Positions 7,975 to 57,415 of a DNA stretch of 64,000 bases are shown here, in pieces; position 1 is the stretch's first letter, and the number at the start of each line of letters is the position of its first letter. The stretch lies in the sequence record ON529855.1; one strand, written 5' to 3'. The notes beneath the pieces were generated by a model, which ran no database searches, was not told the DNA's origin, and was given only the letters and a program-made list of their open reading frames with translations. A program made the position numbers and the translations under genes.

Positions 7975-8042
7975 GGGTCCTCCGTGGCGTCGTCACCAGC
8001 ACGCGTAAAGGAACGGCCAGCGACTGTCAACGGTGCTGACAA

Positions 8043-24306: not shown

Positions 24307-24389
24307 GCCGCTTTTCTGCCTTGTCGATTTTTTCGTGTCAACCGCAACGGCGCCGGTTGACAGCAATCCCGGCACATGCGAGAAGGACA

Positions 24390-49100: not shown

Positions 49101-50204
49101 GACCTCGGCCAGGGTCGCGCTGGTGTCACGATAGGGGTCGTTGGTCAGCATCGCCGGCGCGTACCCGCCCCTGGCGTAGACTTCATCGGCGCGCTGACGC
49201 ATCATCTGCGCCGTGTCCAGCTTGGCCTGATTGACCGCGACCGTCAGCCGCGACTTGGCCTTCAGGCGCTCGGACTCGGCAATGCGTTCGTGCAGACGTT
49301 GTTGGCTCGCCAACAGTTCAGCCATGGCGACCGGGGTCACGACGCCCTCGGGGGTCTGGTTCGGGTTGGGAGTCTGCATGGGAAAGCCCTCCTTGTTGTC
49401 GTCTAGGTGGGCTGTAAAGGAATGATTCGAGGTTGTCAAGCGGCCACGGCCGCCGGGCGGCGTTTTCTGGGCGGGCCTTTGATCCGCGCCGGTTTCAGCC
49501 TCGCCGGCGCGGTCTGCAAGCCGGCGAACTTGCCGTTGCGGGTGACGCCCACGGGATCGACGCCGGCGATATACCAGCGCTTGTCCTTCTCGTAGATGTA
49601 GGCGATCCCGTCAGGGTCTCTCATGTTATAGCACCGAAACTCGCCGTCCCACCCGCTCGGGAGCGGGACGATATAGACCGCCGCCGGCGTCCCGCGCGGC
49701 GGCTTTACGCTGTAATCCATCATCCCTTGAGGGCATCCTGCATCACGTTGCGCACCCACTGCGCGGTTTCCTGGGTCTGGTAGCGCGCGATGACGACCTC
49801 GCCCTGCGCGCTGATTTCGATGACGCCGAGACGCCCCTGGGGGCCGGCGGGCGGCAGGGGGCGGACCTCGTAGCGGGTGGTCGGGCGCTTGCGCGGTGCG
49901 GCGAGCCTCGCGTCGATGCGCTCGACCATGCGCTTCATGGCCTTCTTCTTTTCAGCCTTCTTGCCCATCAGTCGGCACGCTCATAGTCGACGAAGGTCGC
50001 GCCGCCGGTCAGGTCGTCGATATAGCCTTCAGGGCCGTTTTCGCAGCGGGCGGCGATCTCGTCGATCAGGGCGGTCCAGTCGGCGCCGCGTTTCCTGGCC
50101 TCGCGCTGGGCCACCTCGCGGAAGCGGGCGATACAGGCCTCGGGCGTGTCCGCGAACACCTCGATCTTGAGGTAGGCGCGCATATTGGCGATCAGTCGAT
50201 ACAT
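46186..50204 (-). CDS. nine hypothetical genes
   Basis: 46186-46872, 46884-47684, 47746-48249, 48246-48563, 48529-48879, 48879-49379, 49436-49759, 49720-49968, 49968-50204. Confidence 0.7.
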
Positions 50205-50274
50205 GGGGTCCTCCCTGTTTGTCGTCAGCCTTTCTCCTAGAGGGCCGAGTGACGGTTGTCAACGCTCTCGCGCC

Positions 50275-50305
50275 AAAGAAAAAGCGGCGGGATTGCTCCC
50301 GCCGC
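50275..50305 (-). terminator. intrinsic terminator closing the hfa-like operon
   Basis: GCGGCGGGA-GCAA-TCCCGCCGC then TTTTTCTTT. Confidence 0.88.
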
Positions 50306-50331
50306 CTCTCATTCAGCCTTGATCCGAAGAC

Positions 50332-51327
50332 TTACGGACGGGTGCCGGCCGTCACGGTCACGGTGTTGCCGATAGCGGTGGCTCCCACCGTGGCGCTGCC
50401 GCCGATGAAGCTGTTGTTCAGGTTCATCGTGGCGATTTGCGGCGTATTCAGCCCTTGCGCGCTGATGTTGGCGAGGACGCCGCCGGCGCCGTTGATGTTG
50501 ACCATGTTACCGAACGCCCCGGCGTTGCCCGTCAGCGAGGAGCCGAACGACGCCGAAGAGATGTTGGTGGTCGCCGTCTGGGTCGCGCCCGGATAGCCGC
50601 CAGTCCCGAAACCATTGGTCTGGAGGACCGTGGCGTTGACGAAACCGTCGGCCGACACGTCAAGGGCCGTGCCAACCGCTTGAGAGATCAGGCCGGCGGA
50701 GCCGCCGACGCTGCCGTTCGAGTAGTTCAGCGCCGCGTTTTGGACTGCACCGGAGTTCACCAGCAGGGGCACGTTGCCGCCATTGATCAGGACGTCACGG
50801 TCCGCATCAATGTTGATCGCGGCGCCCACTGCGCCAGAGACGCCATCCAGGCGACCATCCACGCGGGTCGAGCCCATGTTCAAGGTCGAGGATTGGTTGC
50901 CTTGGTTGACGATCGCGAAGTTCGAGTTGACCACCGCGTCGAACGCACGCACGTCGAGCGCCCCGCCCAGGGACTGAGCGCGCAGGTCAGCGCGATCGAT
51001 GGACGAGGAGTTGACGTTGAGCGTCGAGGTTTGCACGCCGCCATTCGCGATGTGCGCGCCGCCGATATAGGGGTTGTTGTAGTAGGCGGCATTGCCCGAA
51101 ATCGTGGCGGTTCCGAACGCCTCGACGTTCAGTGCCGAACCCACGGCCGCAGCTTGGCCCGTCAGCAGGTGATCGACACGGACGTTGGCGACATTGGCCG
51201 TGGCGGTTTGAGTGTTCGGCGAGTGGATGCCGAGGTTACTGCCGACGCGGACGTCGACCGACTGCGCCGAAGCGGCGCCGGCGAACAGGACGACCGAAGC
51301 GGCCGCCAGAAGGAAAGTCTTACGCAT
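50332..51327 (-). CDS. HfaD-like secreted beta-repeat (curlin/amyloid-like) protein
   Basis: Sec signal (ASA|Q); six Q-x-[AS]-T-x-N...A-x-G-x-x-[LV] repeats starting at Q40, Q99, Q145, Q196, Q250, Q297; ends ATAIGNTVTV; downstream of hfaB. Confidence 0.7.
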   Translation of the reverse strand: MRKTFLLAAASVVLFAGAASAQSVDVRVGSNLGIHSPNTQTATANVANVRVDHLLTGQAAAVGSALNVEAFGTATISGNAAYYNNPYIGGAHIANGGVQTSTLNVNSSSIDRADLRAQSLGGALDVRAFDAVVNSNFAIVNQGNQSSTLNMGSTRVDGRLDGVSGAVGAAINIDADRDVLINGGNVPLLVNSGAVQNAALNYSNGSVGGSAGLISQAVGTALDVSADGFVNATVLQTNGFGTGGYPGATQTATTNISSASFGSSLTGNAGAFGNMVNINGAGGVLANISAQGLNTPQIATMNLNNSFIGGSATVGATAIGNTVTVTAGTRP

Positions 51328-51476
51328 TGAGATATTCTCCCGTTGATGAATGGACGAGGCTCGAATGAGCCCCGCTTAATCCCGACCGCTGAACTGGGAG
51401 CGGTCGTCCCTCCCGCCGGGAAGCCCCGGAGGTTGGCGACGCGGTGACCCAGGGCCGCCGCGAATAGGGGTGCGGC

Positions 51477-52367
51477 TTAAGACCGGAAGCTGGCGTCGAC
51501 GAGCGGCGCGCAGTCGCGGAAGTAGTTGCCGTAGAGCGGGTTCAGCAGTTCCAGCGTGGCGTATTCCAGCGTGGCGCGGACGCCGAGTTGGAGCGGCTCC
51601 TGGCCCTGCTTGCCGGTGTTGATGTCCACCAGATAGTCGCCGAAGAAGCGGAACAGGCCGGCGCGGGTCTCGTAGCCGATGATCTGCTTCTGCACCGAGA
51701 CGGTCTTGACGACCTTCAGCGACTTGGTGTCGACCAGGCGCAGGTCCACCGCCGTGTTGATCACGTAGTAGCGCATGCCGGCCTCGAACAGGCTGACGCC
51801 CAGTTCGGCGCCGCCCGAGACGATGTCGTAGTTGACCTCGGTGATGCCGCCGACGATGTAGTAGTCGGAGCCCTGATACTGACCAGCGGTCAGGTTCAGG
51901 CGGCGCAGCGTGGCGGCCTGAGGGTTCGCGGGATCGTAGGCCGGGTCCTGGATCAGTTGGTTCTGGGTCAGGGTGGCTTCGTTGGAGGCGATGTCCATGT
52001 CGAAGCGCTCGACCTGTTCGATGCCGTCCAGCTTGCCCAGAGCCGACATGACCATGAGCGAGCCGCCCTGGGTGATGCGGAAGCCGCCTTCACTGGCCTC
52101 GTTCGAGAACTTGCCGGTGTAGTCGCGGATTTGGCCCACGGCGATGCGGTTCGGAACCACGCTTTGACGCGTCGCCTGGGCGAAGCATTGCATGGCGGGG
52201 TCCATCGGGCTGGAGTTCAGCGTCGGGCGGGTGCCGACCACGACCGGGGCCTGGCCTTGGGCGTTCAGAACCGGCGAGACGGGGGCGGTCGTTGAGGCGC
52301 AGGCAGCCGTCGACAGGGCCAGCACCGACAGCGCGGCCAGGGTGATGATGCGGTTCTTCATGCTCAA
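51477..52367 (-). CDS. hfaB: HfaB / CsgG-family outer-membrane secretion lipoprotein
   Basis: Lipobox STAAC; IAVGQIRDYTGK, ITQGGSLMVMSALGK, VERFD, GSDYYIVGGITEVNYDI, AVDLRLVDT, QKQIIG, EPLQLGVR. Confidence 0.9.
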   Translation of the reverse strand: MSMKNRIITLAALSVLALSTAACASTTAPVSPVLNAQGQAPVVVGTRPTLNSSPMDPAMQCFAQATRQSVVPNRIAVGQIRDYTGKFSNEASEGGFRITQGGSLMVMSALGKLDGIEQVERFDMDIASNEATLTQNQLIQDPAYDPANPQAATLRRLNLTAGQYQGSDYYIVGGITEVNYDIVSGGAELGVSLFEAGMRYYVINTAVDLRLVDTKSLKVVKTVSVQKQIIGYETRAGLFRFFGDYLVDINTGKQGQEPLQLGVRATLEYATLELLNPLYGNYFRDCAPLVDASFRS

Positions 52368-52861
52368 GCAGCCCCGCCCGGTTGACCATTCGTCTGCGAG
52401 CCGGAGCCCGTGTTCGTATTGGTCTGGTTGCCCTGGCTCGTGACGGTGTTGTCACGAATGGTGTTGGTCGCGTCCTGGGTGTTGCCGGTCGAGGTCTGGT
52501 TGTTGCTGACCTGATTGGACGAACCCGAGCACGTCAGCGAGGCGCCGACGGCGGAGGCCGAGCAGTTGTTGTGGGTCACCGACTGGTCGATGAACTGGAA
52601 CACGTTGTTGGTGTTCGCGGCCGAGCCGCCCAGAAGACCGCCGGCTCCAGCGACGGCGGCGGGATTGCCGGCCTGAAGCTGATCGAAATAACCGGCCTTG
52701 TTCAGTTCGAACAGTTGCAGGCTGTTCTGCTTGGCGACGCGGTCGTTGGCCGTCCCGAAGCGCCACGGGGCGTCTTCGCCGATGGCGCGATCCTGGGCGT
52801 GCGCGGCGCTCGCCGCCATGGCGAGGGCGACAGCCACCCCCGCGAGAATCTTCATTCTCAT
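52364..52861 (-). CDS. HfaA-like secreted N/Q/S/T-rich protein
   Basis: Sec signal (AHA|Q); C-terminal half rich in N/Q/S/T/G with SASAVGASLT; hfaA position; GGAGG RBS. Confidence 0.55.
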   Translation of the reverse strand: MRMKILAGVAVALAMAASAAHAQDRAIGEDAPWRFGTANDRVAKQNSLQLFELNKAGYFDQLQAGNPAAVAGAGGLLGGSAANTNNVFQFIDQSVTHNNCSASAVGASLTCSGSSNQVSNNQTSTGNTQDATNTIRDNTVTSQGNQTNTNTGSGSQTNGQPGGAA

Positions 52862-52972
52862 ATAAAAGTCCCTCCGTATCGGCGCGTGCGCCTTGATGAT
52901 GGGCCGGGGCGCGGGAGAGTTCCCGCCGGCCCCGGTCAGTGATCGAGGGTGTAAAGAAACGATTTACGTCTG

Positions 52973-53572
52973 TCAACACTCGACGTCATTTTTCTTGAAT
53001 CGGTTGATCGGGATGCCGCTCAGCGCCTCCCGATACCGCGAGACCGCCGCCTCTGGCGTCAGGAATTCTGACGTGCTCAAGGTCGCAGCGATCCACAGGC
53101 GTTGAGGACGATCCGCCCACACGCCGCCCCAGTCCGCCGCCAAATGTCGGGAATCCTGCCGTTCAGACCCGCATTGAGTCAGAGCGTGTAGATGGGTCTG
53201 CTGTTTCAGGCAGATCAGATCGCCCGCGAGATGCGGGGCGTCGAGCCCGCGCCAGACGCGCGGACCGGTCACATTGTAGCCCGAGGCCCGGAGGATCAGG
53301 AGGTAGCCGTAACGGGGGAAGCCCTGGTCGCGGTGGAAGCCGATCTCGCCGTTGGCCGAGATCACCTGGACCTCGCCAAAGGCCTGACCCATGTTGACCT
53401 CGGATTCCCACAGGCGGTGGCGCATGTGCGGCCGTTGCTGGCGAACGTAGTCGAGTTGCTCGCGCTTGAGGTTGGCGATCCACTCGGGCGGCACCAGAGG
53501 CAGCAGGGCCTTGCCGACGCCGCGCGCCACCCAGCCGATGGCGTCGTATTTAGGCGGGCTCAGGTCGTGCAA
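52973..53572 (-). CDS. putative 2OG-Fe(II)/cupin-fold oxygenase-like protein
   Basis: GFHRDQ (HxD) and distal THLHAL; TTG start inferred. Confidence 0.45.
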   Translation of the reverse strand: MHDLSPPKYDAIGWVARGVGKALLPLVPPEWIANLKREQLDYVRQQRPHMRHRLWESEVNMGQAFGEVQVISANGEIGFHRDQGFPRYGYLLILRASGYNVTGPRVWRGLDAPHLAGDLICLKQQTHLHALTQCGSERQDSRHLAADWGGVWADRPQRLWIAATLSTSEFLTPEAAVSRYREALSGIPINRFKKNDVEC

Positions 53573-56587: not shown

Positions 56588-57415
56588 TCAACCCATCGCG
56601 TCGCCGTAGTCGCGTTCAATCGGGTCCGCGCCCGCCATGATGAACTCGGTGCGGTTGACGATGCGCTGGAGCGGCGGGACCGACAGTCGGGTCATGGAGG
56701 AGCGAACCACCGACGTGTCCTCAAGTCGCGCCGGGCGCATGGCGGCGGGAATGCGGGCGGCCTCGGCCGGCGTCAGGGGCCGCTCGACCGTCTCCTTGCG
56801 CACGAACGTCCCCAGGCGGAACGCCTCGGGGTAGTCGGCGAACACCACGCCCTTCCCGGCGATCATGTCGATCATCGCCTGGCGCCCCTTGCCATGCATC
56901 TGACTCGGCGAGTATTGCGCCCGGCACGCCATGGAGGCGGCGTTCTTCTGGCAGTCGAGGTTGCGCCACAGGAACATGTTGGCGGCTTCCCAAGGATGAG
57001 GAAGCTGACAGACGCGCGCGTCGAACGCCGGCAGGCGATCGTTGAAGGGCTCCCAGAAGCGGATGGCGTGCGCCATGCGCGCGGCCGCCATCGACGCCAA
57101 CACCGAGGTCATCTTGACGATCTTGCCGGAGAAGAAGATGTCGCTCTCGTAGTCGGGCGCCTCCCACACCAGGCTGATCTCGTCAGACTGAACGTAACCG
57201 ATCTTGGCGTGGGTCTTGTCGACCAGATACTCCGCCACCACGATCATCGCCTCGGTCATGCGCGGATCAAACGGCCGCTCCATGCCCTTGGTGAACTTGG
57301 AGAAGCCTCGGCCGTCGATGCGGGCGTAGACTGGCAGGGACGGGAAGAAGCGGCGCGCGGTCTCGCGGCGCTCATAGTCCTTCATCCGGTCGCCGAGTTC
57401 GTCCTTTGTCGTCAT
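56588..57415 (-). CDS. Thg1-like protein (3'-5' tRNA nucleotidyltransferase)
   Basis: RMKDYE, ARIDGRGFSKFT, PFD, YVQSDEISL, FSGKIVK..SV.AS, AFDAR, F.WR..DC.KNA. Confidence 0.93.
   Translation of the reverse strand: MTTKDELGDRMKDYERRETARRFFPSLPVYARIDGRGFSKFTKGMERPFDPRMTEAMIVVAEYLVDKTHAKIGYVQSDEISLVWEAPDYESDIFFSGKIVKMTSVLASMAAARMAHAIRFWEPFNDRLPAFDARVCQLPHPWEAANMFLWRNLDCQKNAASMACRAQYSPSQMHGKGRQAMIDMIAGKGVVFADYPEAFRLGTFVRKETVERPLTPAEAARIPAAMRPARLEDTSVVRSSMTRLSVPPLQRIVNRTEFIMAGADPIERDYGDAMG

What the first reader, a model, noticed from the sequence alone, without database searches (positions are those of the whole stretch)
50275..52976. Phage-encoded holdfast-anchor (hfaA-like, hfaB, hfaD-like) secretion operon
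Seen: three co-oriented exported proteins bracketed by a class I phage promoter (52951-52976) and a strong terminator (50275-50305). They are a Sec-exported N/Q/S/T-rich protein, a CsgG-family lipoprotein with motif-for-motif resemblance to HfaB, and a Sec-exported protein with six beta-solenoid-like repeats. Established: Caulobacterales hfaABD tethers the holdfast to the cell pole, HfaB is related to the curli secretin CsgG, and HfaA/HfaD form SDS-resistant, amyloid-like complexes. Inference: the phage carries its own outer-membrane channel plus fibre subunits, expressed with its early-type genes. It could remodel the polar surface of the infected cell by altering attachment or shedding, clumping hosts, or masking polar receptors against superinfection. 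No hfs polysaccharide genes are in the window. I do not know of a functional description of such a phage module, but could not check the literature.
Basis: partly seen in the sequence, partly recalled or inferred. Interest (0 to 1): 0.92.

Follow-up and report, generated by a model that had tools for sequence, protein, structure and literature searches.

The report
Phage-borne HfaB-type secretion and fibre operon
A giant Brevundimonas phage carries a three-gene operon for an outer-membrane channel related to the holdfast/curli secretins plus two exported partner proteins, one of them swapped wholesale between near-identical phages. It probably decorates the infected cell's surface, and it is not a copy of the host's holdfast anchor.

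Summary
Window 50275-52977 (minus strand) is one operon of Brevundimonas phage vB_BpoS-Domovoi: a recurrent phage promoter motif, three exported proteins (A 165 aa, B 296 aa lipoprotein, D 331 aa with six repeats) and a strong terminator.

- B is a CsgG/HfaB-family channel: NCBIfam HfaB 236.6 bits, below the 300-bit cut-off, and 44% identical to a true HfaB.
- D is at best a very distant HfaD relative. D itself gets no hit, its relatives score 20-28 bits, and hhalign gives 61% probability.
- A is not HfaA: 0 of 69 family members hit the HfaA model.

A belongs to an unnamed family that sits upstream of HfaB-like channels in Sphingomonadales, Cardiobacteriaceae and a conjugative element, and in large phage contigs, some of them low-GC. 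The module therefore looks like a self-contained, mobile secretion-plus-fibre cassette, not a holdfast anchor.

The mature part of D is a sharply bounded hypervariable cassette. There are three alleles about 36% identical, while A and B are 92-100% identical.

Only B had been annotated before, in CcrColossus and CcrPW, and I found no paper that discusses the module. Its function in infection is inferred, not shown.

The parts
52951..52977 (-). Phage promoter-like motif: GTTGACA, spacer, then a TTTCTTTAC box
   Evidence: Read. It is one of 14 coding-strand GTTGACA copies (16 in all against 4.5 expected). About 11 of them share the TC[AG]TTCCTTTAC box at fixed spacing. Activity and timing were not tested.
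52862..52950 (-). Structured 5' leader with a G+C-rich hairpin, ending in the Shine-Dalgarno sequence GGAGGG before the ATG of A
   Evidence: Sequence. Fold gives -40.8 kcal/mol, z -2.8. No Rfam family matched.
52364..52861 (-). Gene A: 165-aa Sec-exported protein. It has a conserved N-terminal domain of about 40 residues, then an N/Q/S/T/G-rich tail with two Cys.
   Evidence: ORF. There are 21, then 68, relatives, none of them named HfaA. The N-terminal motif is shared with the upstream genes of cellular and conjugative-element HfaB-like loci. No Pfam, NCBIfam or PDB hit. AlphaFold2 gives one confident helix (residues 37-54) and a low-confidence tail (71-164).
51477..52367 (-). Gene B: 296-aa lipoprotein of the CsgG/HfaB family, the predicted outer-membrane secretion channel. 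It overlaps the stop codon of A.
   Evidence: Pfam CsgG E 1e-17. NCBIfam HfaB 236.6 bits against a 300-bit cut-off; CsgG equivalog 37.9 bits against 505. 44% identity to a true HfaB, E 1e-58. The family profile matches solved CsgG structures at E 5e-19 over almost the whole mature protein. Falls in PHROG 20175. Overlap with A shown.
51328..51476 (-). 149-nt structured spacer between B and D, conserved among the Brevundimonas phages
   Evidence: Fold gives -69.1 kcal/mol, z -2.8. It lies inside the 92-96% identical block shared with Kabachok, Bambus and Marchewka.
50332..51327 (-). Gene D: 331-aa Sec-exported protein with six repeats, rich in G/A/N/V/S/T and without Cys. The mature part (about 50343-51251) is a hypervariable cassette.
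   Evidence: ORF. Six repeats. Three alleles are 35-38% identical while A and B are 92-100% identical. Nucleotide similarity stops at 51252-51259 and resumes at 50342-50344. Only 6 relatives among 1.84 billion representative proteins. Relatives hit the HfaD model weakly. hhalign against HfaD gives 61.5% probability.
50275..50305 (-). Intrinsic terminator closing the operon
   Evidence: Hairpin plus U-run. -35.3 kcal/mol for the 74-nt stretch, z -3.4. A terminator is annotated at the same relative position in CcrColossus.

Best explanation
This is a self-contained secretion-and-fibre operon of the HfaB branch of the CsgG (type VIII-like) secretins, carried by a lytic giant phage and made in the infected cell.

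Proposed mechanism:
1. Transcription starts at a phage promoter with a perfect TTGACA -35 box and ends at the terminator after D.
2. A and D cross the inner membrane by the Sec pathway.
3. B is lipidated, sorted to the outer membrane and assembles a CsgG-like oligomeric channel.
4. A and D leave through B. D, built of six beta-rich repeats, is the exposed, polymer- or layer-forming subunit. A docks at or primes the channel through its conserved N-terminal domain, with its low-complexity tail outside the cell.
5. The result is a remodelled surface on the infected cell.

Shown here: the gene content, the export signals, the family of B, the conserved three-gene layout across phages, a conjugative element and bacteria, and the cassette-like hypervariability of D.

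Inferred: channel formation, secretion of A and D through B, fibre formation, and purpose. My preferred purpose is masking or altering the cell surface in competition with other phages, or sticking infected cells to neighbours or surfaces. The wholesale exchange of D alleles between near-identical phages fits an exposed protein under diversifying pressure.
For: - Operon anatomy and export signals.
- B belongs to the CsgG/HfaB family.
- In Caulobacter crescentus, HfaB is needed for HfaA and HfaD to reach the surface, and these form heat- and SDS-resistant multimers (PMC6707917, read).
- The A-B-D layout is conserved in five Brevundimonas and two Caulobacter phages, in phage-like metagenome contigs, in IMG/VR viral contigs of 107-500 kb, and in a conjugative element, a Cardiobacteriaceae genome and a Novosphingobium genome.
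- The A N-terminal motif is shared across all of these.
- D carries the repeat motif also seen in true HfaD and shows weak homology to it.
- D is hypervariable with sharp boundaries just after its signal peptide and just before its stop codon.
- The high-GC phage copies of B form their own clade, so this is an old phage lineage and not a recent capture from the host (crude neighbour-joining tree, no support values).
Against: - There is no expression, localisation or assembly evidence of any kind.
- A and D gave low-confidence structure models (pLDDT 51 and 44), and Foldseek found nothing significant for D. A beta-solenoid or fibre fold is therefore not shown.
- A and D match no curlin, CsgE/CsgF or PDB profile.
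- The residues aligned with the CsgG constriction loop differ from those of CsgG, so the channel's properties are unknown.
- The host's own hfa genes could not be fetched for comparison.
Confidence: 0.55

Rival explanations
1. Literal holdfast-anchor mimic. The phage proteins are HfaA/HfaB/HfaD equivalents that join or displace the host holdfast anchor at the pole, changing attachment or shedding.
For: B scores higher on the HfaB model (236.6 bits) than any of the ten other phage or cellular HfaB-like proteins tested (188-228 bits). The gene order matches hfaA-hfaB-hfaD in a true locus. D-family members hit only the HfaD model, or hit it best. The hosts are Caulobacterales.
Against: A is a different family from HfaA. 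B is below the equivalog cut-off and only 44% identical to a true HfaB. D itself fails the HfaD model. The same cassette occurs in non-Caulobacterales genomes, in a conjugative element and in low-GC viral contigs. No holdfast polysaccharide genes are annotated in the parts of the window that were read, window 1-61000.
Confidence: 0.15
2. B serves as an outer-membrane pore for some other purpose in infection, such as envelope permeabilisation, export of a small product or help with lysis. A and D would then be periplasmic accessories, not surface fibres.
For: Only the family of B is firmly established. The tail of A is predicted with low confidence (pLDDT below 50, read as possible disorder) and no fold was obtained for D.
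Against: The strict three-gene linkage across very different carriers and the hypervariability of D point to A and D as the cargo, and to an exposed D. The operon is not among genes annotated as lysis or structural.
Confidence: 0.12
3. D, with or without A, is a virion or adsorption-related fibre. Its variability would then reflect host-range specificity.
For: Allele swapping with sharp boundaries is typical of phage receptor-binding proteins. The non-significant Foldseek neighbours are beta-helical tailspikes and fibres.
Against: A and D carry cleavable Sec signals and B is a lipoprotein. These send the products out of the cytoplasm, where tailed-phage virions assemble. The module lies in an accessory region far from annotated structural genes. 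The same cassette is present in non-phage genomes.
Confidence: 0.05
4. Assembly artefact, host-contig contamination, or a decaying passenger without function.
For: G+C content is like the host's.
Against: The region is 100% identical in two independently sequenced phages. The module is conserved in five Brevundimonas and two Caulobacter phages with intact reading frames, a phage-type promoter, a terminator and the same flanking phage genes.
Confidence: 0.02

Closest known systems
HfaA-HfaB-HfaD holdfast anchor of Caulobacter crescentus and other Caulobacterales (NCBIfam NF037934, NF037935, NF037936)
   Same: The gene order is the same: small exported protein, then CsgG-like lipoprotein, then repeat-rich exported protein. 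B is 44% identical to a true HfaB and matches that model end to end. D shares the recurring A-x-G-N-type repeat motif and has weak profile similarity to HfaD.
   Different: A has no detectable similarity to HfaA. B scores 236.6 bits against a 300-bit cut-off. D is shorter (six repeats), lacks Cys and is hypervariable. The carrier is a lytic phage. No holdfast polysaccharide genes are nearby, and related cassettes occur outside holdfast-forming lineages.
Curli (type VIII) secretion system of Enterobacteria: CsgG channel with CsgE, CsgF, CsgA and CsgB
   Same: B has the CsgG domain and aligns with solved CsgG over nearly the full mature protein. The logic is the same: a lipoprotein channel plus Sec-exported, repeat-rich, N/Q/G-rich cargo.
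   Different: Similarity to CsgG is weak (37.9 bits against a 505-bit cut-off). A, D and their relatives get no curlin-repeat, CsgE or CsgF hit. The residues aligned with the CsgG constriction loop differ.
Caulobacter phage CcrColossus gp241-gp243 and CcrPW gp250-gp252
   Same: It is the same three-gene module in the same subfamily (Dolichocephalovirinae). A is about 41% identical, B about 54% and D about 33%, and a terminator follows D.
   Different: Only the middle gene carries a family name there: 'putative CsgG-like curli assembly protein', or the legacy name 'putative transcription activator protein hfaB'. The CcrColossus genome paper does not mention CsgG or hfa.
Unnamed cassettes (A-like protein, CsgG/HfaB-family protein, large repeat protein) in Pseudomonadota, including one at the end of a Trb type IV secretion gene row on an integrative conjugative element
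   Same: The layout is the same, A has the same N-terminal motif, and B is 45-52% identical.
   Different: The third protein is much larger (454-1054 aa) and not alignable with D. Many cellular B proteins carry an extra OmpA-like domain. No function is described for these cassettes either.

Membership tests
HfaB, holdfast anchoring protein (NCBIfam NF037935, equivalog) | Whole-protein score at or above the curated cut-off of 300 bits | tested here: not met
   236.6 bits, E 2.6e-70, covering model positions 4-262 of 264. The positive control, a true HfaB from a Robiginitomaculum genome, scores 407 bits.
CsgG/HfaB superfamily (Pfam PF03783) | CsgG domain above the gathering score, with full-length similarity to solved CsgG | tested here: met
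   64.6 bits against a 20.8-bit cut-off. PDB CsgG at E 1.4e-9 for the single sequence and 5e-19 for the family profile.
CsgG/HfaB superfamily (Pfam PF03783) | Lipoprotein signal peptide with the acylated Cys | tested here: met
   The signal peptide ends in a Cys that aligns with the lipobox Cys of the true HfaB. This was judged by eye; no lipoprotein predictor was available.
HfaA, holdfast anchoring protein (NCBIfam NF037934, equivalog) | Score at or above 50 bits, or at least detectable profile similarity | tested here: not met
   A gets no hit at E <= 1. None of 69 family members hits. hhalign of the A family against four true HfaA gives 0.3% probability. The positive-control HfaA scores 77.5 bits.
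HfaD, holdfast anchor protein (NCBIfam NF037936, equivalog) | Score at or above 100 bits | tested here: not met
   D gets no hit at E <= 1. Its relatives P0193, P0194 and P0195, CcrColossus gp243 and the D-like protein of L020 reach only 20-28 bits. The positive control scores 174 bits.
HfaD, holdfast anchor protein (NCBIfam NF037936, equivalog) | Remote homology, meaning the same repeat superfamily | tested here: inconclusive
   hhalign gives 12% probability with 6 sequences and 61.5% (E 7.8e-5, 245 columns) with 13 sequences. The repeat motif is shared. Repeat and low-complexity composition inflates such scores.
Holdfast anchor system as a whole | Works with hfs holdfast polysaccharide synthesis and export genes, and has polar localisation | not testable with these tools
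   None of the gene products annotated in window 1-61000 is a polysaccharide gene. The host genome and protein localisation are out of reach.
Holdfast anchor system as a whole | A and D equivalents form heat- and SDS-resistant multimers that depend on the channel | not testable with these tools
   This is known for Caulobacter crescentus HfaA and HfaD (PMC6707917). It is a biochemical property.
Curli system (CsgA/CsgB curlin repeat; CsgE and CsgF accessory proteins) | Cargo with curlin repeats, and accessory proteins of the CsgE or CsgF families | tested here: not met
   A, D, 69 A-family members and eight D-like or large downstream proteins get no curlin, CsgE or CsgF Pfam hit. The A N-terminal profile finds no CsgF chain in the PDB at E <= 10.
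Unnamed A-B-D cassette of Pseudomonadota, conjugative elements and large phages | A-family N-terminal motif, immediately followed by an HfaB-like gene and then an exported repeat protein | tested here: met
   This grouping is defined here and is not a curated family.

The most novel reading that the evidence does not exclude
Large lytic phages and conjugative elements share a portable, self-sufficient HfaB-type secretion module. It builds a fast-evolving fibre or coat on the carrier cell, and its exposed subunit (D) is exchanged as a cassette between co-circulating phages. On this reading it acts as a surface weapon or shield in competition between mobile elements, or as a device that glues infected cells to fresh hosts. 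That would be a class of phage-directed surface remodelling not yet described.
Probability: 0.35. Interest if true: 0.78.

Novelty: new variant of a known kind. Interest (0 to 1): 0.62.

Why it matters
Phages are known to alter host surfaces with enzymes and exclusion proteins. A complete outer-membrane secretion channel with its own cargo, carried by a lytic phage, has not been discussed in any paper I could find.

If the module does build a surface structure, three things follow:
- It would show that CsgG/HfaB-type secretion is a mobile trait shared among phages, conjugative elements and bacteria.
- The hundreds of uncharacterised CsgG/HfaB-family cassettes in Pseudomonadota would get a first working model.
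- The D cassette would be a readable marker of an arms race at the infected-cell surface.

It also corrects the annotation. All three genes are 'hypothetical' in Domovoi, and B carries a misleading legacy name in CcrPW.

Tried and rejected
- HfaA identity of A. Tested with the NCBIfam HfaA model on A and on 69 relatives, and by profile-profile comparison with four true HfaA. All negative.
- CsgF-like docking peptide in A. The N-terminal motif of the A family reminded me of the N-terminus of curli CsgF. No CsgF Pfam hit appeared in 69 members, and the full-length and N-terminal profiles found no CsgF chain in the PDB. It remains an idea only.
I relied only on the alignment printed.
- Structure route. 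D folded alone gave pLDDT 44 and A with 69 sequences gave pLDDT 51. Foldseek with the D model returned nothing significant, so no fold claim is made.
- Fetching the hfaABD genes of Brevundimonas or Caulobacter. The single genome-collection scan returned Robiginitomaculum, Hyphomicrobiales and Gemmatimonadales loci only. The comparison with true Hfa proteins therefore rests on four closely related Robiginitomaculum loci.
- Defence and other libraries. PADLOC gave no hits. PHROGs gave only an unnamed family for B. Rfam gave nothing above threshold. Ten neighbouring genes had no Pfam domain.
- Diversity-generating retroelement as the source of D variability. I rejected this because the alleles are only about 36% identical along their whole length and D has a single copy in the genome.
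- Literature. Searches combining hfaB, CsgG, curli or holdfast with phage, CcrColossus or jumbo phage found no discussion of the module.


Full report
**1. What the window is.** The 2.8-kb region is 100% identical to Brevundimonas phage vB_BpoS-Domovoi (ON529855.1, 352.7 kb, Dolichocephalovirinae) and to its sibling Papperlapapp. Window position equals record position minus 62000. These phages were isolated from sewage on Brevundimonas pondensis and described in PMC10070969, which mentions neither curli nor holdfast. In the Domovoi record all three genes are 'hypothetical protein'. The surrounding tens of kilobases are mostly small minus-strand genes of unknown function, with a few tRNA-related and nucleotide enzymes. 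Ten neighbouring genes have no Pfam domain.

**2. The observation.** Three minus-strand ORFs are present as described: A (52861-52364, 165 aa), B (52367-51477, 296 aa) and D (51327-50332, 331 aa).
- A and D start with Sec-type signal peptides.
- B has a signal peptide ending in a Cys that aligns with the lipobox Cys of a genuine HfaB.
- A and B overlap by four bases. A and D have good Shine-Dalgarno sequences.
- The terminator at 50305-50275 is a G+C-rich hairpin plus U-run. The 74-nt stretch folded gives -35.3 kcal/mol, z -3.4.
- The promoter-like element at 52977-52951 is one copy of a recurrent motif: GTTGACA, then 9-10 nt, then TC[AG]TTCCTTTAC. GTTGACA occurs 16 times against 4.5 expected, 14 of them on the coding strand, usually 40-60 nt before a start codon.
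- The 89-nt leader and the 149-nt B-D spacer are both more structured than shuffled controls (z about -2.8). No Rfam family explains them.
- D contains six repeats of 47-58 residues.

The labels 'class I' and 'early-type' could not be tested.

**3. What the proteins are.**

*B* is a CsgG/HfaB-family lipoprotein.
- Pfam CsgG E 1e-17.
- NCBIfam HfaB 236.6 bits over the full model, below the 300-bit equivalog cut-off. The curli CsgG equivalog gives only 37.9 bits.
- The family profile matches solved CsgG structures at E 5e-19 over nearly the whole mature chain.
- In the printed alignment, the residues opposite the CsgG constriction loop differ from those of CsgG.

*Positive control.* I needed real Hfa proteins to test A and D. 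The one genome-collection scan returned four Robiginitomaculum loci. Their three consecutive genes pass the NCBIfam equivalog models for HfaA (77.5 bits, cut-off 50), HfaB (407 bits, cut-off 300) and HfaD (174 bits, cut-off 100). So the three models exist and work.

*Comparison with that control.*
- B is 44% identical to the true HfaB (E 1e-58).
- A has no similarity to HfaA by BLASTP, by the HfaA model (0 of 69 relatives) or by hhalign (0.3% probability).
- D does not hit the HfaD model itself and is not significantly similar by BLASTP.
- True HfaD is built from the same kind of recurring A-x-G-N-x-hydrophobic motif.
- Five D relatives hit the HfaD model weakly, and it is their only or best hit (E 1e-6 to 2e-4, 20-28 bits).
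- hhalign probability rises from 12% to 61.5% (E 7.8e-5, 245 columns) as the D profile deepens.

I read D as a probable, very distant member of the HfaD repeat superfamily, with the usual caution for repeat proteins.

**4. Relatives and context.**

*Known phages.* The A-B-D module is in all five Brevundimonas phages of this group and in Caulobacter phages CcrColossus (gp241-243) and CcrPW (gp250-252), and in no other of the 50,697 phage records. In CcrColossus, B is annotated 'putative CsgG-like curli assembly protein'. In CcrPW it is 'putative transcription activator protein hfaB'. The CcrColossus genome paper does not mention it, and literature searches found no discussion of such a phage module.

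*Metagenomes.* Phage-like contigs (small genes without Pfam hits, a homing endonuclease, Thg1) carry the same trio. So do IMG/VR contigs of 499.6 kb (59% G+C) and 229.5 kb (38% G+C). A 107-kb, 39% G+C contig has a shorter version.

*Bacteria.* The closest cellular B proteins (45-52% identical) are generic 'CsgG/HfaB family' proteins of Sphingomonadales, Shinella, Solimonas and Cardiobacteriaceae, many fused to an OmpA-like domain. They score 188-228 bits on the HfaB model, so they too are HfaB-like without being HfaB.

Their loci have the same layout:
- a 173-203-aa exported protein with the A-family N-terminal motif (pairwise E 1e-8; alignments);
- the channel;
- a large repeat-rich exported protein of 454-1054 aa.

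One such cassette, found in many genomes, sits right after the TrbL-VirB8-TrbG-TrbI genes of an integrative conjugative element.

*A family.* A profile search retrieved 68 proteins, none named HfaA and one labelled 'Curlin' by UniRef.

*Tree.* A crude neighbour-joining tree puts the high-GC phage B proteins in a clade of their own, apart from true HfaB and from the cellular HfaB-like proteins. This argues against a recent capture from the host.

**5. The hypervariable cassette.** Among the five Brevundimonas phages, A is 92-100% and B 96-100% identical. D falls into three alleles only 35-38% identical: Domovoi with Papperlapapp, Kabachok with Marchewka, and Bambus alone.
- Bambus and Marchewka have identical A and B but D proteins 36% identical.
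- Kabachok is the same species as Domovoi (PMC10070969) yet carries the Marchewka-type D.
- Nucleotide similarity runs through A, B, the spacer and the D signal peptide, stops at window 51252-51259, and resumes at 50342-50344, a few codons before the stop.
- A search of 1.84 billion representative proteins found only six relatives of D at E <= 0.001.

This is allele replacement by recombination at fixed borders, the pattern expected for an exposed product under diversifying pressure.

**6. Structure attempts.** AlphaFold2 on A with 69 sequences gave pLDDT 51: one confident helix in the conserved N-terminal domain and a low-confidence tail. D alone gave an all-beta model at pLDDT 44. Foldseek found nothing significant with it; the non-significant neighbours are beta-helical proteins. 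A and D have no PDB relatives by sequence. No fold claim is made.

**7. Explanation.** The best reading is a self-contained secretion-plus-fibre operon of the HfaB branch of CsgG-like secretins, made in the infected cell. B would be the outer-membrane channel, D the exposed repeat subunit, and A a channel-associated adaptor or primer.
- *Shown:* gene content, export signals, the family of B, conserved linkage across carriers, and the hypervariability of D.
- *By analogy with C. crescentus*, where surface display of HfaA and HfaD depends on HfaB (PMC6707917): secretion of A and D through B.
- *Inferred:* purpose. I favour surface masking in competition with other phages, or adhesion and aggregation. 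The presence of the cassette beside conjugation genes on a mobile element is compatible with a cell-contact role, but that too is inference.

The literal holdfast-anchor reading is weakened by A not being HfaA and by the cassette's presence outside holdfast-forming lineages. A virion role is unlikely given the export signals. Contamination is excluded.

**8. Novelty and verdict.** The kind of system (a CsgG/HfaB channel with secreted partners) is known, and the middle gene had been named in two phage records. New as far as I can tell are:
- the recognition of the three genes as one conserved phage module;
- its membership in a wider, mobile A-B-D cassette family distinct from hfaABD proper;
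- the D hypervariable cassette.

I rate it a new variant of a known kind, of moderate to high interest, with function still unproven.

Noticed in passing
window, minus strand; motif starts at 8031, 10495, 20189, 21872, 26801, 33678, 41432, 46190, 52977, 56592, 58798 (weaker copies at 24342, 47741, 50263): A recurrent two-box promoter-like motif (GTTGACA, about 10 nt, TC[AG]TTCCTTTAC) heads many transcription units of this accessory region. It looks like a phage-specific promoter class with a perfect host-type -35 box.
   Followed up: partly
window 50237-50263 (-): A second GTTGACA lies 12 nt after the terminator's U-run, with a degenerate second box. It probably restarts transcription for the next small gene (50204-49968).
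   Followed up: no
L003:4459-7363 (CP045434.1); the same in L004 and L005: An A-like, HfaB-like and 454-aa repeat-protein cassette sits directly after the TrbL, VirB8, TrbG, TrbI and DUF2274 genes and before a serine recombinase, on an integrative conjugative element. Its channel protein is labelled MULTISPECIES Pseudomonadota and occurs on many contigs.
   Followed up: partly
one search hit list (for example P0070, P0072, P0082, P0099; P0036): Many cellular HfaB-like proteins are fused to an OmpA-like peptidoglycan-binding domain (PF00691), and one is fused to a SPOR domain (PF05036). The phage proteins lack such anchors.
   Followed up: no
L019:2539-5134 (IMG/VR contig of 229.5 kb, 38% G+C) and L023:3050-5068 (107 kb, 39% G+C): Low-GC 'viral' contigs carry an analogous trio whose A-like proteins show the same N-terminal motif. 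L023 has sugar-nucleotide enzyme-like neighbours and may be cellular or a prophage, so its viral status is uncertain.
   Followed up: partly
window 52862-52950 (-) and 51328-51476 (-): Both the operon leader and the B-D spacer fold more stably than shuffled controls (z about -2.8) and are conserved among the Brevundimonas phages. They may have a regulatory or RNA-processing role. No Rfam match.
   Followed up: partly
L016:3893-4738 (CcrPW gp251): The GenBank product name 'putative transcription activator protein hfaB' is a legacy misnomer for a CsgG/HfaB-family lipoprotein.
   Followed up: yes
window 56588-57415 (-) and L026:2010-2831; L025:1690-2142: A tRNA-His guanylyltransferase (Thg1) gene, or a His-tRNA-synthetase-like fragment, lies a few kilobases upstream of the module in Domovoi and in related metagenome contigs. 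This shows conserved synteny of the accessory arm.
   Followed up: no
window 49968-50204 (-) against L017:5150-5386 and L018:5237-5473: The small gene just downstream of the terminator is 100% identical between Domovoi and Kabachok but only 38.5% identical to the gene at the same position in Bambus and Marchewka. DNA identity there is about 72%, so variability extends beyond D on that side.
   Followed up: no
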